This document shows positions 2,888 through 34,395 of a stretch of DNA of 64,000 nt, piece after piece. The position numbers were made by a program, and so were the translations under genes. Position 1 is the first letter of the stretch, and each line of letters starts with the position of its first letter. The notes under the pieces are model-generated. The model was given only the letters and a program-made list of their open reading frames with translations, was not told the origin of the DNA and made no database searches. Source of the stretch: Saccostrea cucullata (lineage: Eukaryota); NCBI RefSeq assembly GCF_032062105.1, contig NW_026930709.1, forward strand, positions 186,001 through 250,000, written 5' to 3'.

Positions 2888-5800
2888 ATGCCTCTCAAAA
2901 ACATCCCAAAATGTTTGTCACCTCAGCTCCTGCATGTTCTGGCGTCCATGGGACATGGAGATGAGATTGGTACTGAATTCTCCGAAAGAAAATACAATTT
3001 TTTGTTTAAAATTGCTTTATTTATTTATTGTAACTTGAATTTACTCTGCAAGTCTGAAACATTTGTTCAACATTTTCAAACATACATAACCAGCAGAAAT
3101 TTCTTTTTTCTAGTATTAGCTGATGCCCATTTTCCATCGTCTTCTATATGCAGGGATGGCCCAATAGAAGTCAGGGCAGATGGTAAGAATTTTATAGAAC
3201 GTTTGAAATGTTATGAAATCTTGAAATAAGAACATTTCAATTAAATCAAGTAAATCTACACCGTAGGCCTTACAATTCTTATTTGTTAATGCTGACAAGA
3301 AATTCAATTGAAAAAGGAAATTCCATAAAAATTATTATGCAAAGACTATTTCAGTATATGACATGTAATCAATTAAACTTATTAATTTTCATGATTTGCT
3401 GGGTTAAATAATGTTCACATCAATGATTTTTTCCATTGGAATCGAATTAAAATGAGACTTCTTGGATCAGCCATGTATACACTCTTACGCAGAGTGAATA
3501 CGGCGCAGATCTAAGAAGTCTCATTTTAATTAGATTGTGATTTTTTTCTGACAGGTCTAGATATACCTACCCTTTTGGATGCAATTCTACAGTTGCTCCC
3601 CCTTGATACGTATGTTGACTCTTCAGTAAGTTACACTTGATGTTAGAAATATCATGTTCCATTATATCATATTTTAAATAAAATTGGAAAATCTGATGTT
3701 TTTCGCAATTAATTTGAAGAATAACAAAAATTTGCTAGTTTCGCAAATATGAAAAAAAAAAATTGACTGGGCCATAATACACCTGTCCTATTGACCCATT
3801 GTTCTATTCCCTAGGTAGCCTTAATGGACCCAGTCCAGAGTGATAAAGACAGTCACATACAGATTCCCGTGTGGAGCAAGTACAAGGAGATTATCAGAAA
3901 CAGGGAGGGCCCCAGTGTATGTCATTAGTCTATTTATAAATCTGAAAATCAGTGACAGTAAGGTTACCACTGGAAATCTGATAGCTTTGAATACATTTCT
4001 TTGCTCAGCATACTTATAGTTTCCCCATCATCAACTCTTCATGTTTAAACAGTATACATAAGGAATCACTGTCTTCTTAGTAGAGTATGCTAGGGAATCA
4101 ACGATAGTTGGAATCATGGGATAATTTGCATAAGGGGCAAAGCCCAAGTTTCCAACTATCATTGATGTCCCCGGCATACTTTACTAAGTTAAACTTAGTT
4201 ATTCTGTGCATTAATTTCCATTTCATTGTGAAATAAAATTGTAAATTTAGATTTTGAAAAATGTAGACTAACAGATTTAAATTACACAAGCCTTCCATGT
4301 CAATTTCAATAGTCCCCGCCCACTGACAAACACAAAGACAGATTTACATGCATATTAGGCCTCCTTAGCTCCTGACCTATTGCTTGGCAAAATTTACATT
4401 CTGATAGAATGTTCAAGAAATAAACTCTGCCAACTTTCAAAGAGTTACCACAGAAGAAAAAATAGTGTGGAATCATTACTGTTTTTGGGGGACCAATGTT
4501 TGTGGATTTTGTTGGCCACCCTTATCCAACAGTTAACATGTCCATAAATAATTAATTTGTCAATATATTTATTCATTGAATCTTGTGTAAGTGCAAAATA
4601 CCCACAAAATAAAATCGCTGCAAACTAACATAATTTTGCACTCCCACAAATTGCAATGATTCCACAGTATTCCGTAAGTCTCTGCAAGTGAATTGTCATT
4701 ATATTTGCCAAGTTCTTTGCATGGCTTTGTATGCATGTTGATTGGTTTAAATAGAAGTGAACATCTTCATGTGAAGAGAACACTTCAATTTTTGTTGCAT
4801 CGATCCTCACAAACATTGTGTTCTTAGCCCACTCATGGCTGTTGGACTCTTGACAAACTTTCTTTGAATTTTTACAGAAAATCCTGAGTTTTTCCCTCTC
4901 TCTCTCTCGGCCAATTCTTTTAACAAAGCCTTTCTATCTGTAATACATGTATGTACAATGAGATGTTAACTGCCTAAATTCTGCTTACATTTTATCTGTC
5001 AGTGAGTTTTGAAAGTCCAAATGGTTGGTGCTTTGAATGAAAAAAAAATTATAAGTTTGTCAGTGGTCCCATGGCCAGAACAGGACATAAGACCTGATGT
5101 AATGTAGGTAATTTGAAGGAGATAGAATACATTAGCTTATAATAGTATAATCAATTTAGGAATCTAAAAACTTATGAATGTTGTTAATGACCTGGTGAAA
5201 TGTGTTTTTGTTATAGGTGGTAATCGAGTATGTAGAAAGATTTGCCTTTTATAGAAGAGCCAAGACAGCATATGCCATTGTTCACACAGGGTAATGCTAT
5301 TTCATGCATTTTAATTATTTTCAACATTTTTTGACCTTGACCTTTCCTTTGACCTTGACCTCACTTTTCTTAAATTAGTGTTTAGCTCAGTTTTAAACAT
5401 ACCATTCATGACGGTGTTATCAAACTTCACATTTTGATACAAACTTGCATGGATGATGCATCTAGGGATGAAGACTACCAGACTTGCTTCGGATGCTGGA
5501 TCTGACCTACATTTTCCAGATGAGTGACCAGGTTAAAGTTTTTGGAGCAGGTTCCTTCCTTAGGAACTGTAAGCCCTACTTGCACCAAACTTGCATGGAT
5601 GATGCATCTAAGGATGGACACTACCAGACTTGCTTCGGATGCTGGATCTGATCTATATTTTCATTGCCAAATAACTATAAGCCCTGCCTGAACCAAACTT
5701 GCATGGATGATGCATCTAGGGATGGACACTACCAGACTTGCTTCAGATGCTGGATCTGACCTACATTTTTATTCCCTAGTAACTATAAGCCCTACCTGAA

Positions 5801-19294: not shown

Positions 19295-22200
19295 GTTGTC
19301 AATTAATTATAAAGCATGATCTCATTTGTACCAGCACATTGTAAATATTCATATAAATAATGCAGTATATTTTTTATTTAAGTTTTCATTAATGCATGAT
19401 GTTTTTATGCCCACGTAGGCCTAATTGAAGATTCAGGGGTATATAGTTTTTGCTCTCTCCATCTGTCTGTCTGTTTGTCTGTTAATCTGTTTGTCTGTTA
19501 ACCTGTTTGTCGGTAGAAACTTTAACCATGACCATAACTTTTGAATGGGTGGGTCTATGGCTTTTAATTTCAAAGGTGTATTCCTTGTGATGAAACCCTT
19601 TTTGAGTACCACCATTTGACCTCTTGATCTTGAATTTGGAGTTTGACCAACTTTTGAACAGTTAGTACTTCATAGGTTTATTGCTTATGACAAGACATTC
19701 CTTTGGATATCAATAATTACAGCCTTCACTACTGAATTAAATATCCCCTTAGATTCCAAAAAATCCCCTGTTGTCCCCCTGTCAGTCCCTGACATTTTCC
19801 TGTCTCTCCCTGACTTTCTCCTATGATCCCCTGTCGTTGTCCCTGCTCTCCCTGTCCAGTCCCTGTCGTCCCCTGTCGTTGTCCCTGCCCTCCCTGTCTA
19901 CTCCCTGTCGTCCCCTGACATTCTCTGATCTCCCTGTCCAGTCCCTGTCGTCCCCTGTCGTTGTCCCTGCCTTCCCTGTCTACTCCCTGTCGTCCCCTGA
20001 CATTTATTTTGGCCAAGAAAAGGAGTTTAAAAAATATTTTTGTTGCATTTAAGAGTGAAAAATAATATAGTCTTGAAAAATTTAAGTTTTTTTTTTTTTG
20101 AAAATATAGACTTAGTAAAAAGTTAACACATTTTTAAATGCCTTAACAAAATCCCCTGTAATTTAGTTTCTATTACTTGTATCAATGTGATTATTTTAGT
20201 GTGGTAGCATTTCGGGGGAGAAGGACAGAGAATTGCATCATTATAAAGAAGAAATAAATTAGCAATTTATTTCATCTTGTGATGTTAGACGGCTTATACA
20301 TTGTACTTTATGGACCTTTTATATATATTTATAACTTTTTCATTTTTTATTTGATCTACTTTGAAACATCTTTGAGCGTAATAACTGTCTTTGTAAAAGA
20401 ACTAGATTTAAACATTTGAGAATACATTATCAAATCCATGCATGGGATATTTTTGTTTTACCAAAGAATTAAAAAATTAATTGAAAGGAATGATATATGA
20501 ATGTATTAATAAAATAAAAGTCTATTTAATAAATAAAAATTATTAAATAAACTAAAGATATATTTTATTCATTTATTTTCTTATGTGAATAAATCTACAA
20601 CAATGAATAAATAAATAGATAAATAAATAAATAAATAATGAGAATTATATAAATTTATTCATTTATTTTTTATTTTTTTAATTTATCGCTCATTTATATC
20701 CCCCAGAATTTGATTTATTAGTTTTATTTTATTTATTTGCTAAAATATCCTACAAAGTATTTTATTAGCATATTTAAACGACTTTTTATTACTTAAAGTC
20801 CATGATGGATATCAAAATAATCGTCTCATTATGCACAATATTAATCCGTCAATTAGATTTTTGATACTTTGTTTTGATTAAAAAATCGGTTTTCAAAACC
20901 CTAACACGGTTCTGAAACAACATCAAAGCCACTGATGTTTACCAGTAATTAACTCGGGGTACACAGTCATGACACCTATTATTTTTTTTTCACTGACCAC
21001 TATACCTTGTTTATATTGTGACAGGACGAGCGTGTGTAGTTTGCAGCGGTTTGAAATAACATTTTCTCTTTGTATGAGAACTTAATTTTTTTTTTTCAAT
21101 CAAAACAAAATAAAAGTATTAAAGAAACTATTGACGGGTAAAGATTGTGCATGATGAGACGATTATTTTGATATCCATCATGGAAGTAAAATAATTAAAA
21201 GCAGATTTAATATGCTTCAAGAATACTTTGACACACATTTTTTGCGTAAATAGTTTTACATAAAATAAGCCAAACAAAATTCCATTTTCGGGTATTTGAT
21301 TATTTAATTTGTATGTATTGTCAATTTTAAAAATAAAAAAGATTGTTTTTATCATAAATAAATACATGCAGTTAATATTTTTTTTTCTTTTTTGTTTACT
21401 AACTATTCAAAATCAATTATTGTTTTGATTTTAAAAAATTAATTATTCTAAAATGCACCAATGCTCCCTGCTATCTCTTTATTTTTTCTTTCTTTTCTTT
21501 TTTTTTTATATTATTATTATTTTTTTTTTTGAACAAATGGTAAAAAGTCAAACCAGTACTTAACGAATAAAACAGATTACAGCGAAATAAATTCATATTA
21601 AATAAATAAAGTAAAGTAAATGAATAATAAAAAAAATATTAATAAAATATTAATCTATTTAATTTTGAAATTGAAAATAGAACAAATTAATTAATCATTT
21701 TTATCTGCAAGAAATTGTGTTTCTTTAGTTTTATTTTATATAAACACTTGCATCCGTTGATGTTCTACAAAGTATTTTATTAGCGTATTAAAACGACTTT
21801 TTATTACTTAAAGTCCATGATGGATATCAAAATAATCGTCTCATTATGCACAATATTAATCCGTCAATTAGATTTTTGATACTTTGTTTTGATTAAAAAA
21901 TCGGTTTTCAAAACCAGGTTAACACATTTCTAAACAACATCAAAGCCATTGATGTATACCAGTAATTAACTCGGGGTACACAGCCATGACACCTATTATC
22001 TTTTTCACTGACCGTTATACCTTGTTTATATTGTGGCAGGACGACCGTGTGTAGTTTGTAGCGGTTTGATATAACATTTTCTCTTTGTATGAAAACTCAA
22101 TTTTTTTTTTCAATCAAAACAAAATAAAAGTATCAGAGAAGCTATTGACGGGTAAAGATTGTGCATAATGAGACGATTATTTTGATATCCATCATGGAAG

Positions 22201-23958
22201 TAAAATAATTAAAAGCAGATTTAATATGCTTCAAAAATACTTTGACACATATTTTTGCGTAAATAGTTTTACATAAAATAAGCCAAAAGAAACCATTTTC
22301 AGGTATTTGATTATTTAGTTTGCTTGTATCGTTAATTATAAAGATAAAAACATTGTTTTTATCATGATTAAGTACATGCAGTTAATAAGTTTATTTGTTT
22401 TTATTTACTAACTACTTAAAATCAATAATTGTATTGATTTTAAAAAAATCAATTATTCCAAAATGCACCAATAACCCCTGCTGTTTGTCTCTTTTTTCTT
22501 TCTTTTTTTTTTTTATATTATTTTTTTTTAACAAATGGTACAAAGTCAAACCAGTGCTTAACGAATAAACAGATTTCAGCTAAATAAATTCATAGTAAAT
22601 AGATAAAATAAAATAAATGAATAATAAAAAAAATATTAATAAAATATTAATCTATTCATTTTTGAAATTGAAAATACAACAAATTAATGAATCATTTTTA
22701 TCTGCGAGAAATTGTGTTTCTTTAGTTTTATTTTATATAAACACTTGCATCCGTAGATGTTCTACAAAGTATTTTATAAGCGTAGTAAAGCCACTTTTTA
22801 TTATTTTAAATACATGATGGATATCAAAATAATCGTCTCATTATGCACAATATTAATCTGTCAATTTGATTTTTGATACTTTGTTTAGATTGAAAAAATC
22901 GGTTTTCAAAACCCTAACACGGTTCTGAAACAACATCAAAGCCATTATTGTTTACCAGTAATTAACTCGGGGTACACAGTCATGACACCTATTGTCTTTC
23001 TCGCTGACCGCTATACCTTGTTTATGTTGTGTTCAGAGTGACCGTGTACAGTTTGCAACTGTTTGAAATAACATTTTCTCTTTGTATGAGAACTTAATTT
23101 TTTTTTCAATCAAAACAAAATAAAAGTATCAAAGAAGCTATTGACGGCTAAGGATTGTGCATAATGAGACGATTATTTTGATATCCATCATGGAAGTAAA
23201 ATAATTAAAAGCAGATTTAATATGCTTCAAAAATACTTTGACACATATTTTTGCGTAAATAGTTTTATATAAAATTAGCCCCCCCAAAAAATCCCATTTC
23301 GGTTGTTTGTTATTTAATTTGTTTGTCTTGTCAATTTTAAAAATAAAAAAGATTGTTTTTATAATAAATAAATACATGCAGTTAATAAGTTTATTTATTT
23401 ATTTTGGTTTTTTTTTTTTATTTACTAACTATTTAAAATCGATTATTGTATTTATTTTAAAAACTTAATTATCCTAAAATGCACCAATACCCCCTGCTGT
23501 CTCTCTCTTTTTTTTTCTTTTAAAAAGTCAAACAAGTATTTAACGAATAAAACAGATTGCAGCGAAATAAATTCATAGTAAATTAAAAAAAATAAAATAC
23601 ATGAAAAATAAAAAAAATATTAATTAAATATCAATCTATTTCTTTATTTTTGAAATTGAAAATGGTACAAATTAATGAATCATTCAATCTGCAAGAAATT
23701 GTGTTTCTTTAGTTTTACTTTAAAATTATATAAACAATTGCATCCGTAGATGTGCTACAAAGTATTTTATTAGCGTATTAAAACGACATTTTATTATTTT
23801 CAGTACATGATGGATATCAAAATAATCAGCTTATTATGCACAATATTAATCTGTCAATTTGATTTTTGATACATTGATTAGATTGAAAATATCAGTTTTC
23901 AAAACCCTAACACGGTTCTGAAACAACATCAAAGCCATTGATGTTTACAAGTAATTAA

Positions 23959-26900
23959 GGGAGCTCTAAACACTGACAATCAGGACAATTTAGGACTTAA
24001 TAGAAATATATTTTATAACTGAGTTCATAAATGATTTTTTAAAAATATTTTCATACATGGATGCCACCATTTTTAATAAAATAAAAATGATAGAAATAAG
24101 GGAATATGTAGGAAAGTGAAATTTTTTTTATTTTTTACACAAATAATTTTCTCCAAAATTTCTTGAAGTCTTATATCATTGTTACATAAACCAACATACA
24201 AAAAAAATTAAATACATAGAATGACCCCAACAGTTCAGAAATATTTTGACATTTTTTACAAAAGATTACAAAAAATGTAAGGATAATCACAGATATTTTT
24301 TGTATATATGGAATTTTTGAATTTTTCTACAAATCTAAATAAAGGTTTTGCTATTTGGTGCACAAAAATTCATATCTTACATGGTGGAGCCAGGTTTATA
24401 AGAGAGATAAAAAATAAAATAACATATAACTTTACAATTATAAAAACAAAGGGAAGTAACTCTTTACAACTGACTTGACAAATAATTGGACACCGAGTTG
24501 ATTATTTTCTTACACTTTGTAACTCTTGCTTTACCATTTACAATTTCTTGAAACAAGTTTTTTACTCCATCTTCACCATTTCTTGTGTGTGCTAGTTTAA
24601 TATAATTCAAATTCAAACCAGATTTTGCAATTTTATTTGCCATAAATTCTGTTATCACTTTTCCATGGACTAAGACGTCAAGAGATTTCAAATTGTCATT
24701 CTTTACTGAAGAAAACTTTAGATGCTGTAAAACATAATTGTACATGACACTTTGACTCAACAGAGTGTTGAAAGGAATGTTATGAAAGTTCACTAAATTT
24801 TGTAGGTCCATAGCATCAGTTAGAGCACAATGAGAAACCCCTGTTGACTGGATTCCTGCATCTCTCATAAGAGACTCCTGAGAAAAACTGCCAGTTTGTG
24901 TCTTTAAATCAGAATTTTTAAAAAACCTCCAAAGTGTCGATAAAGCCGGCAATGCATGTATTCATCACAATATTTTGTGACGTAATGTTTTGAATAAATA
25001 AAGGAAAGTCAAACCGTAATCCATTGTGGCTTACAAGAATGTTAGAATTCGAGTCCGATAACCACTCTGAAAACTTTTGGAGTGCTGATTTCAAGTCTGT
25101 TGTTGCAAGTTTTTGATCCCTGTAGTAAAGTTCATGGTTTTTCATATGGAGACCAGTCACACAAGTTGCATTTGCAGATATTGTACCATTGGGTTTTATG
25201 TATTTTTGAAATATATCCTGTCCTCTTGCAGCTCCTATTTCCAATATTTCTGCTGATGAACCTGTAAGACAAATCTGAGACAATGTATCTCTAGAAAAAA
25301 AATGTATATATCTATATATCAATGTCTCATGGAAATACATGTGTATATATATCTATATATAAAACTTTACCTAAACCTGTTGTTTCTAGGTCAAAGTAAA
25401 CAAATGTGCTATCAGTATTTCTTAGTGGTATTCTCTCTGGTTCAACAGTGGCACTTGGAATGGAATTGATGTCCTGCTCCTCATCCATTTTCTCTAGTCC
25501 AACCGACGTTTCATATGTTTTTCCTTCACGCACTTCTTTACAACCCTGATCTTGACTTGAGGATTTCCTAATTTGGCATCTCCTTTTCTTGTACTCTGCA
25601 CTACTCTGTCTTATCTTCTGTAACTTTCTTTTTCTGTCCATCTTTTCAACCGCCTTTTCTGTATAGGCTCCAGGAGACATATTCAGTTCATCATTGACCT
25701 GTAAATATACATGTAAACATAATCATTACTCCTTCACATGAAATGAGAATACATGTATATGATTATTTTATAATGCATAATTTTTTTGATTATCAAATAT
25801 ACTTACTTCTTGTATATAAGACTTTCCAATGTTTTTCTGTGCAACAGCTGCAGCGATTCTGAAACTTGTACTTTCTGATCCTGACAGAAAGAGGCTCTTT
25901 GGATTTTTTGATGCAACGATGTGATTAAAACTTTCGCATGCTTGTGTTGATCCAAGATCAGATAGTTTATCAGCTTGCTGTGCATACGTCTGAATAATGG
26001 CTTCCAAGTCCTTTTTCAACTCTGGACATGTTAGATACCTGCTGTATGGAAGATTCTGTGGAAGGTAACTTGCTGGATTCCGCTTATATTTACACCATGA
26101 AGGGCATGCCAGATGGTCTCCATACATATGAGGAATAATACACAACAAGGATTTTTTCAACTCTTCAGGTTTCTTCTGGTTCTGGGCAAGAACATAAGAA
26201 AAGCATTTCTTTAGATGTGTCATAGTTTTTCCTCTAAGTTGTCGATACTTTTTGAATCTTTGCAAATCATACAGTTTGTTTGAAAATGTTTTCTTCAGGT
26301 GATTTCTGTCACTGAATTTTGTAATACTTTGCTCACACTCTTTTCTTGCACGTGAGATTGTCGTACTGTCATCATCCATTACTAATTCATGTGGATGGAT
26401 ATGATCTTTTTCTAAGTCTTTCAACATCCCCACTATCATGTCAGGCTCCATAGCTTTGGCCGAGCCATCCCAATTCTTCCTGGAAATTAAAATATAAAAA
26501 TAAGCATGTAAAAAAAAAATAAATATAGACACTGTATTAATTTGCAGTGACCTTCAATAAATATTGATTTTTTTTTTACTTTACATATTCATTTTTATAT
26601 ATTATTATACATTTGATACTTATCAACTTCTTACCTGCAGTCATGGTCAATGGGCTGAATGCCTTTTCTTTTTGCATTTTCACAAAGTCTGCATTTTCTG
26701 CATCTATAATCATACCGCACTATTTTCCCAGATTTATCACCTATAAGTGAACTGTGACCTGTGGTTAAAAAAAAATAAAAAGAGATATATTCATAATCAC
26801 CTCATAAATAAGTTTTATTTACAAAAATATTTTTTTTTCTCAAAGTTTCTTCTTGAGTGCACTGCATACCTGAATAGCTGTTATATTTCCTTCCACTAGA

Positions 26901-28723
26901 TCTTGTTTGCCATCCAGCATCAGCCGCAACTCTTATTTCAACTTTCCTAAAAAATATATACATGTATATAAAAAACTACACTGTCATAGGAGAAATAAGA
27001 AAGACAAAAGGATGTTGAGATCATGATGCTTGGTATATTTTTTTCATAAAATTTAATTCCATAAAATTTACCCATCATTCATTTTTATTTCTTCATCAAG
27101 AGCCTCAGTGCAACTTTTTTTGGCAACAGATTCAATAGCCTTTCCTGCTTCTCTGTCTCTTTTCTTGACTGTTCCAGCCGCTACACCAGGGATATTCAAT
27201 GATGCAAATAACATTTGTAAATTAGAAAACCCTATTCCACTGCTGGTAATACCTACAAGACACAGAATGAATTGAAAATAAAATATTATTCACTATCAAA
27301 TATGCTGCATTATTAAATCATATTGCAAATTTTTCTGAAATTACCTGCACCAAGCTTAGTGTTCACATCCCAAATGTTTTTTTCATGCCGCTTTCCAGTG
27401 GGGATGTTTGAAATAAAACTGCATATAGTACACTACAAAATTAATGAAATATTTCATATGAGTCATGGCGATTACTTACAAAATTAGGTTCTTTTATTAT
27501 AATTGTTTATGTTGATGATGATGTATTTGACATTTACCTTTATGTACAAAATACTTCCAAGGCCATAATGCCTCTCTTGAAAACAATCACACAGATGTAA
27601 TACAGTCCCACATTTCTTGCATCCTTTCTGTAGCTGTGCTGCTAGCACACCAAGCTCAACCACTCGACGACCCTTTGTATGATACATGTATTTGTTTCAA
27701 AGTAAAATTGATATAAAAAATATCAATACGTAAAAGAAAATGGAATTGATGAAAACTAAAGTTCATTTTTGCATTCTACATGTTTTGTGCACATTCTGTG
27801 TTAAACTTGTAGCTTGCAGAAAGCCTTGAAAAAAGTAACAGAGACCCTTTCAAAATAACTGTTGTACTATTCTTTTGCAGGAAATTTCTTTAGTGAAATG
27901 TGACCTAGAAGCAATTGTTAAATATACATAATTTAATATCTATCAACAAAAACTTTTCCATACGTTATTAACTTGATTAATTTGTCCTGCAAAAGAGTAG
28001 TAACACAGTTATTGTCTAAAGAACTAATATGTAAGGTTTTCATTTAGAAATACCTCATGCCAGTCAAGTAAATTCTTTGAAACATCTGGGTGCAAAGTGT
28101 CTTCCTCATTAGTTTCGTCGGGCGGATCGTCGTTTCTATCGTTGCCTCTGTAATCTTCATCGGATGTATCTAATTCATCCTCGTCCTCTTCATCATATTC
28201 CGACCAACCCTCGTCAATGCTGGTACTCATAATATTTTTACCATGATTTGGGGGTTTTGAATAATCATGATCCATCCTTAACAAAATTTCGATAAATATA
28301 ATTACAACATTGAACAAAATATTCTATTACTTCTAAAGACATGATGTTTTTTTTCTCAAGTTTCCGAAAGCCGTTTTTAGAATTAAAATGACTATCGTGC
28401 AGTTACCTGGAGTCCTCTAATGTTTTTCTTTCAATTGCTTCAGATGTAGGAATTGGAGCAGACTTTATTTTGGGGCGAAATCTTCCGCTTTTATAGCGTT
28501 TTCTCAAACATGTCAAATTAGTGGACATGCTGTCTGTCATGTTGCCACTCTTTTCCTACCTTTTTATCCTAGAGAGCGGAAAGGGGAGTAATTCATTTTA
28601 TATTTTTAGAGTATTGACGGAATTTTTTTTCCCGAATAAATACGAAGGGCGGATCACTCCAAGCTCCAAAAAATACCGAAGCTACCGGAAGACTCTTTAG
28701 GCAGTGCAGTGTTTAGAGCGTCC
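23959..28723 (-). mobile_element. Kolobok-type DNA transposon (4765 bp)
   Basis: TTAA TSD at 23955-23958 and 28724-28727. 17-bp TIRs GGGAGCTCTAAACACTG / CAGTGTTTAGAGCGTCC (15/17 match) give GG...CC ends. Removing it restores the unit sequence gtaaTTAActcgggg seen intact in the other five units. Confidence 0.88.
24464..28540 (-). CDS. DDE transposase (Kolobok/Mutator-like domain) fused to DEDDh exonuclease, ~919 aa, 10 exons: 28407-28540, 28054-28276, 27538-27672, 27345-27432, 27072-27252, 26870-26946, 26635-26758, 25807-26479, 25371-25698, 24464-25261; one 1-nt frameshift at ~24920
   Basis: All 9 introns are GT-AG with consistent phases. Transposase motifs: WHEGRRVVELG, CKKC..CTIC, AADAGWQTRSSGRKYNSYSGH (D), CRLC..HDCRKNWDGSAKAMEPD, LVMDDDSTT (D), DRNH, HMYGDHLACPSWC, GSTQACESFN (E). 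Exonuclease motifs: FDLETTGL, SHNGLRFD, FIDTL, HCALTD. Confidence 0.85.
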
Positions 28724-31700
28724 TTAACTCGGGGTTCACGGTAATGACACCTATTATCTTTTTCACTGACCGCTATACCTTGTTTATGTTGTGACAGGAC
28801 GACCGTGTATAGTTTGCAGCTGTTTGAAATAACATTTTCTCTTTGTATGAGAACTGATTTTTTCAATCAAAACAAAATAAAAGTATCAAAAAAAACTATT
28901 GAGGGGTAAAGATTGTGCATAATGAGACGTTTATTTTGATATCCATCATGGAAGAAAAATAATTAAAAGTAGTTTAAATATGCTTCAAAAATACTTTGAT
29001 ACATATTCATTGTTAATCAGTTTACATAGAATATGCGAAACAAATCCCATTTTCGGGTATATGATTATTTAGTTTGCTTGTATCGTCAATTTAAAAAATA
29101 AAAACATTGTTTTTATAATGATTAAATACATGCAGTTAATAAGTTTATTTTTTTTTACTAATCAATTATTGTATTGATTTAAAAAAAAAAACTAAAATAT
29201 TCCAAAGTGCGCAGTGCCCCTACTTTTTTTTTTCTTTTCTTTTTTTTTATTTTTACAAAAGGTAGAAAGTCACTCCATTGTTAAATGAATAAAACATGAA
29301 TAAAATAAAACTCTACAGAAATACAATTTCTTGCGGATATAAATAATTGACTAATTTGTTTTTTTTTTTTAATTTCAAATATAAATAAATAAATTGTTTT
29401 TATTTATATTTATTTTATTATTTTTTTTTTATTTTTTTTTATTTATTTACTATGTATTTATTTCGCTGTAATCTGCTTTATTCATTAAATACTGGTTTGA
29501 CTTTGTACCATTTGTAAGAAACAAAGTCAGCAGGGGGTATTGGTGCATCTTGGAATGTTTTAGTGTTTAAAACCAAATCATTAATTGATTTTAAATACTT
29601 AGTAAATAAAAAAAAAAACTTATTAACTGCATGTACTTAATCATGATAAAAACAATGTTTTTATCTTTAAAATTGACGATACAAGCAAACTAAATAATCA
29701 AATACCCGAAAATGGAATTTTTTTGGCTTATTTTATGTAAAACTATTTACGCAAAAATATGTGTCAAAGTATTTTTGAAGCATATTAAATCTGCTTTTAA
29801 TTATTTTACTTCCATGATGGATATCAAAATAATCGTCTCATTATGCACAATCTTTACACGTCAATATCTTCTTTGATACTTTTATTTTGTTTTGATTGAA
29901 AAAAAAATTGAGTTTTCATACAAAGAGAAAATGTTATTTCAAACCGCTGCAAACTACACACGGTCGTCCTGCCACAATATAAACAAGGTATAACGGTCAG
30001 TGAAAAAGATAATAGGTGTCATGGCTGTGTACCCCGAGTTAATTACTGGTAAACATCAATGGCTTTGATGTTGTTTAGAAATGTGTTAGGGTTTTGAAAA
30101 CCGATTTTTTAATCAAAACAAAGTATCAAAAATCTAATTGACGGATTAATATTGTGCATAATGAGACGATTATTTTGATATCTATCATGTATTTAAAATG
30201 ATAAAAAGTCGTTTTAATACGCTAATAAAATACTTTGTAGAACATCTACGGATGCAAGTGTTTATATAAAATAAAACTAAAGAAACACAATTTCTTGCAG
30301 ATAAAAATGATTCATTAATTTGTTGTATTTTCAATTTCAAAAATAAATAGATTAATATTTTATTAATATTTTTTTTTATTATTCATTTACTTTACTTTAT
30401 TTATTTACTATGAATTTATTTCGCTGTAATCTGTTTTATTCGTTAAGTACTGGTTTGACTTTGTACCATTTGTTCAAAAAAAAAAAAAAAAAAAGAAATA
30501 ATATAATAAAAAAAAGAAAAAAAAAGAAAGAAAAAAGAGAGAGACAGCAGGGGGTATTGGTGCATTTTAGAATAATTAATTTTTTAAAATCAATACAATA
30601 ATTGATTTTGAATAGTTAGTAAACAAAAAGAAAATAAATAAACTTATTAACTGCATGTATTTAATTATGATAAAAACAATCTTTTTTTATTTTTAAAATT
30701 GAAAATACAAACAAATTAAATAATCAAATACCCGAAAATGGAATTTTGTTTGGCTTATTTTATGTAAAACTATTTACGCAAAAATGTGTTTCAAAGTATT
30801 CTTGAAGCATATTAAATCTGCTTTTAATTATTTTACTTCCATGATGGATATCAAAATAATCGTCTCATTATGCACAATCTTTACCCGTCAATAGCTTATT
30901 TGATACTTTTATTTTGTTTTGATTGAAAAAAAATGAGTTCTCATACAAAGAGAAAATGTTATTTCAAACCACTGCAAACTACACACGGTTGTCCTGTCAC
31001 AATATAAACAAGGTATAGCGGTCAGTGAAAAAAAAAATAGGTGTCATGGCTGTGTACCCCGAGTTAATTACTGGTAAACATCAGTGGCTTTGATGTTGTT
31101 TCAGAACCGTGTTAGGGTTTTGAAAACCGATTTTTTAATCAAAACAAAGTATCAAAAATCTAATTGACGGATTAATATTGTGCATAATGAGACGATTATT
31201 TTGATATCCATCATGGACTTTAAGTAATAAAAAGTCGTTTAAATATGCTAATAAAATACTTTATAGCATATTTTAGCAAATAAATAAAATAAAACTAATA
31301 AATCAAATTTTGGGGGATATAAATGAGCGATAAATTAAAAAAATAAAAAATAAATGAATAAATTTATATAATTCTCATTATTTATTTATTTATTTATCTA
31401 TTTATTCATTCATTCTTAATTCAGTCGAGTTGTAGATTTATTCACATAAGAAAATAAATGAATAAAATATATCTTTAGTTTATTTAATAATTTTTATTTA
31501 TTAAATAGACTTTTATTTTATTAATACATTCATATATCATTCCTTTCAATTAATTTTTTAATTCTTTGGTAAAACAAAAATATCCCATGCATGGATTTGA
31601 TAATGTATTCTCAAATGTTTAAATCTAGTTCTTTTACAAAGACAGTTATTACGCTCAAAGATGTTTCAAAGTAGATCAAATAAAAAATGAAAAAGTTATA

Positions 31701-34395
31701 AATATATATAAAAGGTCCATAAAGTACAATGTATAAGCCGTCTAGCATCACAAGATGAAATAAATTGCTAATTTATTGCTTCTTTATAATGATGCAATTC
31801 TCTGTCCTTCTCCCCCGAAATGCTACCACACTAAAATAATCACATTGATACAAGTAATAGAAACTAAATTACAGGGGATTTTGTTAAGGCATTTAAAAAT
31901 GTGTTAACTTTTTACTAAGTCTATATTTTCAAAAAAAAAAAAAAAACTTAAAGTTTTCAAGACTATATTATTTTTCACTCTTAAATGCAACAAAAATATT
32001 TTTTAAACTCCTTTTCTTGGCCAAAATAAATGTCAGGGGACGACAGGGAGTAGACAGGGAAGGCAGGGACAACGACAGGGGACGACAGGGACTGGACAGG
32101 GAGATCAGAGAATGTCAGGGGACGACAGGGAGTAGACAGGGAGGGCAGGGACAACGACAGGGGACGACAGGGACTGGACAGGGAGAGCAGGGACAACGAC
32201 AGGGGATCATAGGAGAAAGTCAGGGAGAGACAGGAAAATGTCAGGGACTGACAGGGGGACAACAGGGGATTTTTTGGAATCTAAGGGGATATTTAATTCA
32301 GTAGTGCTTTTGACCTTGAGCTGCATTTGAGAAAGTTCAACCCTAGGCATAAACTGCCATTCAGGGCATCAGTGTTTCACAAAAACAACTTTTTTATTTT
32401 TGCATTTATGAAATCATGGAGTCAAATTGGAGAAAAACTAATTGCTCAATGTAACTATTCTGAAGCTTGTATTTGATTCAGTGTAACTATTCTGAAGCTT
32501 GTATTTGATGTACATAATTACCAGTATATATATTTATTGAAGGTTTACAAAACCTAATGTGTCATATATTCCAGTTTAGAGCTCAATGGTTGTTCTTTAT
32601 GTTGAGCGTATTGATGTTGACTTTGGTGATGTATCAAATAAACATACCTGATGCTGTTGAACAGAGTGAATGTTCAAAACACTAGCACATATTTTGTTAG
32701 AGGAATAAGGAATTCTGATAAGCACTTCACCTTGCATTGTATATTCATTTTGTTTAGCAGACCTCTGTATATCATGTTGATGTTTTGAGCAAGTGGTAGC
32801 AAGTAATCTCAAACATATTTATGTACATGCTGTCTTGCAGCTTTGGGGATTTTTAAGTACATGTAATTACATATGTAAGCATTAATGTCCATAGAAAAAA
32901 GTAATTTGAATTACTCAGCTTCAAAAACTTGCATTTTGGGTAGAAAAAAGCATCTCTTTCCGAACATATGTTGCAGTGATATTGCTGGAAAGCTTACAGA
33001 TGTCCTTTTATTTAAATGTGGCAATAATAGCTAAATATGGAAATATTCTGAAATTAAAAAAATTTAATGTACTTCACGAATTATGGTATTCTGTACATGT
33101 ACATACTGTAAATTCATTTCAAATTTGAATTCATTAAGGAAACTAAAATCTGAATTACACCCGGGTAATTTCAAATAGTTTATTTGATTTGTTGTCTTCT
33201 GTTATTTACATAATATTTTCTAGTTGTTTACAAGCACTGTACCAAAAATACAAATGAATGTAAAAAGCATATGTATAATAAACTTAACCAAAATTGTTAT
33301 ATCTCTCTTCTCAACAGTTTTATGCATAAGCTCAATGAATTTATTATATCTTTTTTTTTCAACATTTTGTGCTAAACAAAAAAAAATATGATTTTACAAT
33401 AACTTAAAACAATTTGTACGAAAATACAATTGTTAACCATTCATGAATTGGTACATGTATGACTTAACAACCAAAATTGGACAGTTACAAGGTTTGTTTG
33501 CACATGATTTATAACAAAAAAAGGTGTTTAAAAAACCTGACTACAATCCATAATAGACAAGTCCTGTATATGTATTATTGCACTTTGTGTGTGTGGAGAG
33601 TCACTTTACAACCTTGTGACCTCGAAGCCTTCCCTGTGATCATCCAAAAAAATAGTGCCAGTTTTTCTCTTCAACATTCGTGCCAACATAAAGGAGAGTA
33701 AACAATTTATTTTATATTAATGTGCTCTTCTGCAATATGGTCATTTGATTTCAATTTTTTAAATAATTTAACAAATAAATAAATTCTCAAAAGTACATGT
33801 ATGTAAAAGAAAAAATCCAACTTTTGAATAGATTTAAATATTTCTTGAAACTGATTCTTGGATAAAGAACAGTTCTGAAAAAAAATTGTTAGTAATGAAA
33901 TGGTGGCCTTTAAAGACAGATATGTAGAAAACATCAATTGCAAAATGTAGAGGCAATATCAAAGCTGAACACAAAAGCTTTATCATCTCTAAACTTTATA
34001 ACATGAAGTGTTTTCCAGTGGACATGTTCAAAAGAGGCTGGTTCAAACCACAATTTCTCCCATAACCTTGAAAGTCCCAACAGTCAAACTAAAGGGTACA
34101 AAAACTCCTTTATGAAAAGTGGAAGACCACCTGACCATTTATTGGAATGCACCTCACTTTCAATAAGTCGGGGCAAGACTGCTTTTAATATCAGCACTAA
34201 TAATAAAAAATGACTATTAAATCAACCATAGACAATAAATACAGTTGCTGCAAATTAAATGTATACACCATACTTATACCACTTATAATGTACAAAAAAA
34301 AAGCATTTGTTCTTTTTCCCACACCCCTTCCCTGCATCAACTGTCACATGCTTGTAGGTTGATCATAAATAGATGGTTTCTAGCTTTGTACATGG

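What the first reader, a model, noticed from the sequence alone, without database searches (positions are those of the whole stretch)
23959..28723. Intron-rich Kolobok-type transposon encoding a DDE transposase fused to a PML-like DEDDh exonuclease
Seen: the fragmented ORF track splices into one 10-exon, ~919-aa reading frame. It carries a complete D-D-E triad (AADAGWQ / VMDDDS / ACESFN), several Cys/His clusters and all three exonuclease motifs (FDLETTG, HNGLRFD, HCALTD). A helical tail follows (MANKIAKSGL...GEDGVKNLF...ARVT), and the gene is bounded by TTAA TSDs and GG..CC TIRs. Known (recalled, not searched): Kolobok elements duplicate TTAA, some lineages carry accessory nucleases, and vertebrate PML-I and fish Plex proteins have a DEDDh domain with a similar tail that can restrict retroelements. 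Inference: a nearly intact mobile element that carries its own 3'-5' exonuclease, possibly for end trimming, footprint repair or degrading the cDNA of competing elements. It may represent the kind of element from which PML/Plex exonucleases were domesticated.
Basis: partly seen in the sequence, partly recalled or inferred. Interest (0 to 1): 0.85.

Follow-up and report, generated by a model that had tools for sequence, protein, structure and literature searches.

The report
Oyster Kolobok transposon with built-in exonuclease
This is a real, recently active cut-and-paste DNA transposon of the published KolobokD lineage in an oyster genome; its single spliced gene fuses the transposase to a 3'-5' exonuclease closely related to fish Plex9 and the tail of vertebrate PML, a link the papers searched here do not mention.

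Summary
The element is real and its limits are exact: 4,765 bp at window 23959-28723, with 17-bp inverted ends (GG..CC) and a TTAA duplication. Four uninterrupted copies of the surrounding repeat carry a single TTAA at that site.

The gene lies on the minus strand in 10 GT-AG exons. RNA contigs and reads support all nine junctions. One spliced contig links transposase exons to the exonuclease exons.

This copy is not one open frame. An extra T in a T-run (24920-24925) shifts the frame between exonuclease motifs II and III. A sister copy on contig C21671 has all ten exons open.

The transposase is Kolobok-type, although Pfam labels it "Mutator-like". The exonuclease has an intact DEDDh site and a PML_C (SAM-like) tail.

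The architecture was already named KolobokD by Kojima and Bao (2022, mollusks, arthropods, cnidarians). It is therefore a new member of a known kind.

Less known is that the exonuclease's closest solved relative is fish Plex9. A scallop relative also hits bird PML. My tree does not show whether PML/Plex9 came from such an element.

The scan also noted a similar element elsewhere in this genome (s1-707996).

The parts
28724..28727 (.). TTAA target-site duplication on the 5' side of the element (minus-strand sense)
   Evidence: all 7 full copies are flanked by TTAA. Uninterrupted copies of the host repeat have one TTAA here.
28707..28723 (-). 5' terminal inverted repeat, GGACGCTCTAAACACTG
   Evidence: The same terminal sequence, preceded by TTAA, occurs about 273 times in the genome, mostly at the ends of ~385-bp MITEs.
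28407..28540 (-). Exon 1, with the start ATG at 28540. Basic N-terminus, no Pfam match.
   Evidence: The junction to exon 2 is seen in an X1 contig that came from a copy with a 3-nt shorter exon 1.
28054..28276 (-). Exon 2, an acidic Asp/Glu-rich region with no Pfam match
   Evidence: The joint 27671->28053 appears in RNA contig X1.
27538..27672 (-). Exon 3, the start of the Kolobok (PF20700) domain, holding a CxxC...CxC cluster
   Evidence: PF20700 profile positions 1-48; joints.
27345..27432 (-). Exon 4, holding a CxxC motif (PF20700 profile positions 49-76)
27072..27252 (-). Exon 5 (PF20700 profile positions 93-136)
26870..26946 (-). Exon 6, with the first catalytic D (AADAGWQ, 26907-26927)
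26635..26758 (-). Exon 7, holding the CCHC zinc finger downstream of the first D (CRKC..HDC)
25807..26479 (-). Exon 8. It holds the second D (VMDDDS), DxxH (DRNH), the H..GDH..C..WC zinc finger and the catalytic E (ACESFN).
   Evidence: (PF20700 E 1.2e-28), and (1,614 database relatives).
25371..25698 (-). Exon 9, a basic linker (KKRRCQIRK) followed by Exo I (FDLETTG)
   Evidence: The joint 25696->25805 to exon 8 is seen in RNA-seq run X5, in X1 and in a raw read of X23.
24464..25261 (-). Exon 10 with its stop codon. It holds Exo II (HNGLRFD), Exo III (HCALTD) and the PML_C / SAM-like tail (24470-24694). The frame is broken in this copy.
24920..24925 (-). T-run with one T more than in the six other copies. 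The +1 frameshift creates a premature stop at 24918-24920.
   Evidence: RNA contigs and one read lack one base at 24920.
23959..23975 (-). 3' terminal inverted repeat (...CAGTGTTTAGAGCTCCC)
   Evidence: 10 genomic matches of the 3' end.
23955..23958 (.). TTAA target-site duplication on the 3' side

Best explanation
This is a copy of an autonomous KolobokD-lineage DNA transposon (Kolobok superfamily) in an oyster genome. Exon 8 is identical to a Saccostrea cucullata protein. The copy inserted at a TTAA inside another repeat.

Its one 10-exon gene encodes a fusion protein of about 919 aa. In order, the parts are:
- a basic then acidic N-terminus;
- a zinc-finger-rich Kolobok DDE transposase;
- a basic linker;
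- a DEDDh 3'-5' exonuclease;
- a SAM-like (PML_C) tail.

Shown here: mobility signatures, family copies, a MITE partner family with the same ends, a single spliced mRNA, and conserved catalytic residues.

Inferred: the transposase binds the GG..CC inverted ends, excises the element and reinserts it at TTAA. The tethered exonuclease probably acts on 3' ends of the transposition intermediates or of the broken donor site, as Kojima and Bao proposed for KolobokD.

The window copy itself is disabled by a 1-nt frameshift in the exonuclease, unless that is a homopolymer assembly error. At least one sister copy (C21671) keeps all exons open.
For: Mobility:
- Seven full copies share 96-99% identity, each flanked by TTAA and unrelated DNA.
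- Four uninterrupted copies of the host repeat carry one TTAA at the insertion site.
- The 5' end sequence plus TTAA occurs about 273 times, against 0 for the control pattern. The six loci fetched are non-autonomous elements of ~385 bp (five) and ~700 bp (one), ending in GGA[A/C]GCTC...GAGCTTCC.

Transposase:
- Exons 3-8 cover PF20700 positions 1-357 in order.
- The motifs match Kolobok_1/7/9_CGi in the published Kolobok alignment.
- The DxxH motif and both zinc fingers are as described for KolobokD/E/P.

Fusion:
- X1 contig 2 (1,977 nt) joins exons 10-9-8-7-6-5-4-3-2 at my predicted GT-AG sites.
- RNA-seq run X5 and raw reads of X23 confirm several of these junctions, including exon 8 to exon 9.
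- 63 of the 150 best transposase relatives carry the exonuclease, and 45 also carry the tail.
- D, E, D, H and D are invariant or conserved in at least 90% of 36 relatives.

Exonuclease:
- PDB hits to Plex9 reach 1e-10 to 1e-11 with one exon and 1e-55 to 1e-64 with a profile.
- A model of a close relative's module (the Saccostrea echinata homologue P0010, 93% identical over half of exon 8; pLDDT 96) matches Plex9.1 best (TM 0.9). Exu EXO+SAM comes next.

Literature: the KolobokD lineage is defined in PMC9587614.
Against: - No functional data exist. Excision, integration and exonuclease activity are all inferred.
- The window copy is frameshifted.
- Expression is low: 19 and 24 raw reads in two deep poly-A libraries.
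- RNA contigs cannot be assigned to a particular copy.
- Placement inside the KolobokD clade on a transposase tree was not tested, because no KolobokD reference sequences could be used by reference.
- All protein evidence is exon by exon or from database homologues.
Confidence: 0.88

Rival explanations
1. The element is the same, but the exonuclease is not part of the transposition chemistry. Instead it works like TREX1/Plex9. It would degrade stray single-stranded or extrachromosomal DNA, such as excised fragments or retroelement cDNA. That would hide transposition from host DNA sensing or suppress competing retroelements.
For: The closest characterised relatives, Plex9 and gar PML, are cytoplasmic exonucleases that restrict LINE-1 (PMC10123124). 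Sequence and fold are closest to Plex9.1. The SAM-like tail of PML/Exu is a nucleic-acid-binding module (PMC13659232).
Against: The exonuclease is covalently fused to the transposase in many families. That favours action at the transposase's own substrate. Nothing here bears on localisation or substrates.
Confidence: 0.2
2. The locus is a domesticated host gene (an oyster 'PML-like' gene) rather than a mobile element.
For: NCBI annotates relatives as ordinary genes, either 'uncharacterized protein' or 'protein PML-like'. It has introns, is spliced, and is expressed at a low level.
Against: It has inverted ends and a TTAA duplication, and uninterrupted copies of the host repeat show the empty site. 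Seven or more dispersed copies share 96-99% identity, several with disabling insertions. A MITE family shares its ends.
Confidence: 0.02
3. It is a piggyBac or Mutator (MULE) element rather than Kolobok. TTAA is also the piggyBac target, and Pfam calls the domain 'Mutator-like'.
For: The TTAA duplication and the Pfam PF20700 name.
Against: No piggyBac transposase family came up in the Pfam scans of the exons, only PF20700. The ends are GG..CC (RR..YY), as stated for Kolobok and unlike piggyBac. MULEs make 8-10 bp duplications (from general knowledge). The motifs align with named Kolobok families in the published alignment.
Confidence: 0.03

Closest known systems
KolobokD lineage of the Kolobok superfamily (Kojima and Bao 2022, Mob DNA 13:24, PMC9587614)
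   Same: TTAA duplication, RR..YY ends, and a DDE transposase with a DxxH motif. Both zinc fingers are present, including the CCHC finger after the first D. A DEDDh (DnaQ-type) exonuclease is encoded downstream of the transposase domain. The lineage was reported in mollusks, arthropods and cnidarians.
   Different: This particular Saccostrea family could not be checked against Repbase or Dfam. The paper compares the exonuclease to Exu, TREX and ERI1 and does not mention Plex9, PML or the PML_C/SAM-like tail. Here the gene has 9 introns and its splicing is documented.
Fish Plex9 (PML-like exon 9) exonucleases, PDB 9MRC/9MRD/9L85/9L8B
   Same: Active-type DEDDh motifs. These are the best sequence matches among solved structures (profile E 1e-55 to 1e-64, against about 1e-13 for TREX1). 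They are also the best fold match (TM 0.88-0.90, rmsd 1.8-1.9 A). An eel Plex9-like protein is 43% identical to a scallop Kolobok fusion protein.
   Different: The Plex9 chains and the eel protein found here are short stand-alone proteins of about 190-210 aa. None has a transposase, and no PML_C tail was detected in the eel protein. Here the domain is the C-terminal part of a transposase on a mobile element.
Vertebrate PML-I C-terminal domain (CDE / PXL) and Drosophila Exuperantia
   Same: A two-domain EXO + SAM-like module. The tail matches Pfam PML_C at E 2e-23. A scallop homologue hits bird PML at E 4e-6 in a database of 5.8 billion sequences. Exu EXO+SAM (5L80) is the second-best fold match.
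   Different: Amniote PML and Exu have lost the DEDD residues (PMC13659232), whereas here they are intact. PML has an RBCC/TRIM N-terminus, whereas here the N-terminus is a transposase.
TREX1/TREX2
   Same: The DEDDh fold and 3'-5' exonuclease motifs.
   Different: Much more distant: E 0.015 or worse with one exon, about 1e-13 with the profile, and a lower TM-score. There is no SAM-like tail.

Membership tests
Kolobok superfamily | [quoted passage not shown] | tested here: met
   Seven of 7 full copies are flanked by TTAA. Four uninterrupted host-repeat copies carry a single TTAA.
Kolobok superfamily | Termini 5'-RR ... YY-3' with terminal inverted repeats | tested here: met
   GGA... ...CCC, with a 17-bp inverted repeat matching at 15 of 17 positions. 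The criterion is as stated in PMC9587614.
Kolobok superfamily | DDD/E transposase with a C/DxxH motif between the second D and E, followed by a zinc finger | tested here: met
   D (AADAGWQ), D (VMDDDS), DRNH, H..GDH..C..WC and E (ACESFN) are located. The same layout appears in Kolobok_1/7/9_CGi in the published alignment.
Kolobok superfamily | Transposase groups with named Kolobok families on a tree | not tested
   Only a visual motif-by-motif comparison with the supplement alignment was made. The reference sequences could not be used by reference.
KolobokD lineage | DEDDh (DnaQ) exonuclease encoded downstream of the transposase | tested here: met
   Exo I, II and III lie in exons 9-10, on the same spliced RNA as the transposase exons. 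The fusion is common among relatives.
KolobokD lineage | Second (CCHC) zinc finger just downstream of the first catalytic D | tested here: met
   CRKC...HDC in exon 7.
PML-like (Plex9/PML-CDE) exonucleases | DEDDh domain closer to Plex9/PML than to TREX1 | tested here: met
PML-like (Plex9/PML-CDE) exonucleases | PML C-terminal (SAM-like) domain after the exonuclease | tested here: met
   PF25244 at E 2e-23, 2.5e-22 and 2.6e-22. The model shows a helical domain, and Exu EXO+SAM aligns over 263-311 columns.
PML proper (TRIM19) | RBCC/TRIM N-terminal region; host gene of jawed vertebrates | tested here: not met
   No RING, B-box or coiled-coil family was found in any exon. The N-terminus is a transposase and the host is a mollusk.
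PML-like (Plex9/PML-CDE) exonucleases | 3'-5' exonuclease activity and restriction of retroelements | not testable with these tools
   This needs biochemistry and cell assays.
piggyBac | piggyBac-type DDD transposase and piggyBac-type termini | tested here: not met
   Only PF20700 was found. The termini are GG..CC.
MuDR/MULE | 8-10 bp target-site duplication with a MULE transposase | tested here: not met
   The duplication is a 4-bp TTAA. The Pfam name 'Mutator-like' for PF20700 covers sequences that the literature classifies as Kolobok.

The most novel reading that the evidence does not exclude
The EXO + SAM-like module of vertebrate PML-I and fish Plex9, and perhaps insect Exuperantia, descends from the exonuclease module of a KolobokD-type transposon captured by a host gene. 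A parallel case is the KolX to P2X7 'ballast' origin that Kojima and Bao proposed for another Kolobok protein.

Evidence that does not exclude it:
- The specific, strong similarity described above.
- The shared tail domain.
- The fusion occurs in bivalves, a hemichordate and an ant, whereas PML is reported only from jawed vertebrates (PMC10123124).
- No paper in the searched library holds both Kolobok and PML.

Weak point: the direction is unresolved. In the 102-row quick tree the eel Plex9 sits inside a clade of transposon sequences (SH-aLRT 95). The 57-row tree is a near-polytomy. The AU test does not reject transposon sequences forming their own clade (p 0.68).
Probability: 0.35. Interest if true: 0.7.

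Novelty: new member of a known kind. Interest (0 to 1): 0.42.

Why it matters
As a transposon it adds a well-documented case to a lineage that so far has one paragraph in the literature. The case includes exact ends, uninterrupted copies of the target repeat showing the empty site, a MITE partner family, nine RNA-supported introns, and an apparently intact sister copy.

The wider interest is the exonuclease. PML researchers describe the PML-I C-terminal EXO/SAM domain and fish Plex9 without a known origin outside jawed vertebrates. Here the same module, with an intact active site, rides on a mobile element that is widespread in invertebrates. That makes the transposon-origin question testable, with a properly sampled rooted phylogeny and a search for KolobokD elements in early chordates. 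It also offers an active relative for studying what the EXO-SAM unit does to DNA ends.

Tried and rejected
- I first guessed a Hydra genome from the low GC content. Rejected: exon 8 is 100% identical to a Saccostrea cucullata protein and its neighbours are bivalve proteins.
- I took the Pfam label 'Mutator-like' as a possible MULE. Rejected on the duplication length, the termini and the published Kolobok alignment.
- A homology search with one exon (264 aa) found only 3 hits because of the word index. An alignment query and a region query reached further.
- Searching the KolobokD paper's supplements for 'KolobokD', 'Hydra' and 'DEDDh' found nothing. Motif strings did locate the Kolobok alignment.
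- The 'careful' IQ-TREE searches did not finish in the time allowed, so only quick trees are reported.
- The AU test of nestedness was negative, meaning no rejection.
- The human PML PXL structure did not appear in the sequence or fold searches of the solved-structure libraries.
- The Xenopus Kolobok paper has nothing on exonucleases.
- All searches used single exons by reference or database homologues.
Full report
**What is there.** The stretch 23959-28723 is richer in GC than its surroundings. It carries a string of minus-strand ORF pieces. A whole-genome DNA search shows that the two flanks belong to a high-copy repeat. The stretch between them recurs as a dispersed family of about 10 copies. 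Six other full-length copies align from the TTAA on one side to the TTAA on the other, with unrelated flanks. Four uninterrupted copies of the host repeat carry a single TTAA exactly where the window has TTAA-element-TTAA. The ends are GGACGCTCTAAACACTG and, reverse-complemented, GGGAGCTCTAAACACTG.

**Gene model.** I placed GT-AG borders that keep the frame. The exons, on the minus strand, are:
- exon 1: 28540-28407
- exon 2: 28276-28054
- exon 3: 27672-27538
- exon 4: 27432-27345
- exon 5: 27252-27072
- exon 6: 26946-26870
- exon 7: 26758-26635
- exon 8: 26479-25807
- exon 9: 25698-25371
- exon 10: 25261-24464

The sum is 3n+1. The window has 6 T at 24920-24925 where all six other copies have 5. 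The frame therefore stops at 24918-24920, between Exo II and Exo III. Copy C21671 (L032) has all ten exons open. Other copies carry different lesions:
- a 375-bp insertion in exon 2;
- an 1,105-bp insertion in exon 8;
- 1-, 4-, 7- and 8-nt indels elsewhere.

Pairwise identity between copies is 96-99%.

Every protein search used single exons by reference or database homologues.

**RNA.** Reads and contigs of four runs were laid on the element.
- A 1,977-nt contig of run X1 joins exon 10 (from 25062) to exons 9, 8, 7, 6, 5, 4, 3 and 2. Every joint lies at my predicted border.
- RNA-seq run X5 confirms three junctions, including exon 8 (end of the transposase) to exon 9 (linker plus Exo I).
- Raw poly-A reads of X23 confirm two junctions.
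- Another X1 contig links exon 1 to exon 2.
- X1 and X5 contigs and one read lack one base at 24920, so they carry the unshifted frame.

Depth is low.

**Transposase.** Exons 3-8 match Pfam PF20700 in order over profile positions 1-357. Exon 8 alone scores E 1.2e-28. Pfam calls this family 'Mutator-like'. However, the supplementary alignment of Kolobok transposases in Kojima and Bao 2022 shows the same chain of motifs in Kolobok_1_CGi, _7_CGi and _9_CGi. The chain is D..GWQ, CxxC..HxC, MDxDS, DxNH, H.FG.H..C..WC and ESxN. That paper states the Kolobok criteria: TTAA duplication, RR..YY termini, C/DxxH, and two zinc fingers in some lineages. All are met here. The genome holds at least 150 loci with related cores at 35-70% identity. 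The database holds 1,614 cluster representatives at E<=0.001.

**Exonuclease.**
- Exo I, II and III are intact in the family. D, E, D, H and D are invariant or at least 90% conserved in 36 transposon-encoded homologues.
- The last exon of L032 hits fish Plex9 structures at about 1e-10 to 1e-11, against 0.015 or worse for TREX1.
- A profile of the 36 homologues hits Plex9 at 1e-55 to 1e-64. Next come PolC at 3e-20, Exu at 3e-17 and TREX1/2 at about 1e-13.
- The tail is Pfam PML_C at E 2e-23.
- I modelled the module of the Saccostrea echinata homologue P0010. Its model has pLDDT 96.4. It matches Plex9.1 best (TM 0.88-0.90, rmsd 1.8-1.9 A). Exuperantia EXO+SAM is next, and TREX1/2 and DnaQ-type chains follow.
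- A scallop fusion protein's C-terminal 271 residues hit bird PML at E 4e-6.
- An eel Plex9-like protein is 43% identical to the scallop protein.

**How common the fusion is.** Of the 150 best transposase relatives, 63 carry the exonuclease and 45 also carry the tail. Named examples come from Saccostrea, Pecten, Argopecten, Mytilus, Mya, Mizuhopecten, the hemichordate Ptychodera and the ant Temnothorax. Several are labelled 'protein PML-like' or 'DNA polymerase III PolC-type-like' by NCBI. The NCBI model XP_062567511.1 (562 aa, Saccostrea cucullata) has the length expected if it starts at a Met in exon 5 and ends at the frameshift stop. It is probably this locus's truncated gene model (the coordinates are my arithmetic).

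**What is known.** Kojima and Bao 2022 named 'KolobokD' for Kolobok families encoding a DEDDh exonuclease, in mollusks, arthropods and cnidarians. They compared the exonuclease with Exu, TREX and ERI1. They suggested it degrades DNA intermediates from the 3' end during transposition. The kind is therefore published, and this is a new, well-resolved member. The PML literature I could read does not mention transposons (PMC10123124, PMC13659232). No paper in the library holds both 'Kolobok' and 'PML'.

**Direction of the PML/Plex9 link.**
- Rooted on bacterial-type DnaQ/PolC-like hits, transposon and vertebrate sequences form one clade. Support is 99 (SH-aLRT) in the 57-row tree but only 87 in the 102-row tree.
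- In the 102-row quick tree the eel Plex9 lies inside a clade of 13 transposon-fused and 7 solo sequences, with support 95.
- In the 57-row tree the interior is nearly unresolved, and bird PML sits on a long branch.
- An AU test does not reject a tree with all invertebrate sequences as one clade (p 0.68).

Homology is solid. Domestication from a transposon is plausible from the taxonomic spread but is not shown.

**Mechanism.** The signatures of cut-and-paste mobility at TTAA and a single fusion mRNA are shown. So is a family of ~385-bp MITEs with the same terminal 20 nt and TTAA flanks, with about 273 matches of the end sequence against 0 for the control. Its presence argues that a transposase recognising these ends has been active. 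It is inferred that the DDE domain does the cutting and joining. It is also inferred that the tethered DEDDh domain trims 3' ends of intermediates or of the donor break. The alternative, a TREX1/Plex9-like clean-up of stray DNA, cannot be excluded.

**Verdict.** The novelty is modest, because the lineage is known. There is one interesting and testable evolutionary lead.

Noticed in passing
Genome-wide, e.g. L041 (G000:C8202:714200-721400), L043, L044, L045; related to window 28700-28727: A family of ~385-bp TTAA-flanked MITEs. They share the first 20 nt of the element's 5' inverted repeat and about 78% identity over the first 80 nt. The terminal 25-mer (2 mismatches allowed) occurs about 273 times, against 0 for the control pattern. 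A ~700-bp relative (L046) also exists.
   Followed up: partly
window 23800-23958 and 28724-28950 (flanks): The element sits inside a high-copy repeat, with dozens of copies at 85-98% identity. The two flanks are partly inverted copies of each other (query 1-103 against 5050-5145). Another first-reader note (s1-703803) calls the 19727-32306 region a CACTA foldback element carrying this transposon as cargo. I did not test that classification.
   Followed up: partly
window ~26543, ~27839 and ~27736 (introns): Five of the six other copies have about 377 bp more in the intron before exon 8. All six have 69 bp (or more) and 24 bp more in the intron between exons 2 and 3. The window copy and C1126 lack the 377-bp piece. 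I did not determine whether these are deletions here or nested insertions there.
   Followed up: no
G000, e.g. C828:145032-145697, C6931:187402-188067, C7297:16585-17250: At least 11 loci score almost identically against exon 8 (43% identity). Each lies in a 690-aa open frame without introns, which looks like a different, recently amplified Kolobok family. Overall at least 150 Kolobok-type transposase loci scored in this genome.
   Followed up: no
window 24918-27214: By its length (562 aa) and the position of exon 8 within it, NCBI protein XP_062567511.1 (Saccostrea cucullata) looks like a truncated model of this locus. It would start at a Met in exon 5 and end at the frameshift-induced stop. 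That would make the public annotation a partial fusion labelled 'uncharacterized protein'.
   Followed up: partly
P0179 (Ptychodera flava 'protein PML-like', 371 aa): This invertebrate 'PML-like' protein begins with a stretch resembling the linker of exon 9 (KKRR...EVREG.TY.TS.GL...I[NP]). It is probably a fragment of a KolobokD fusion gene rather than a PML relative in the host sense.
   Followed up: no
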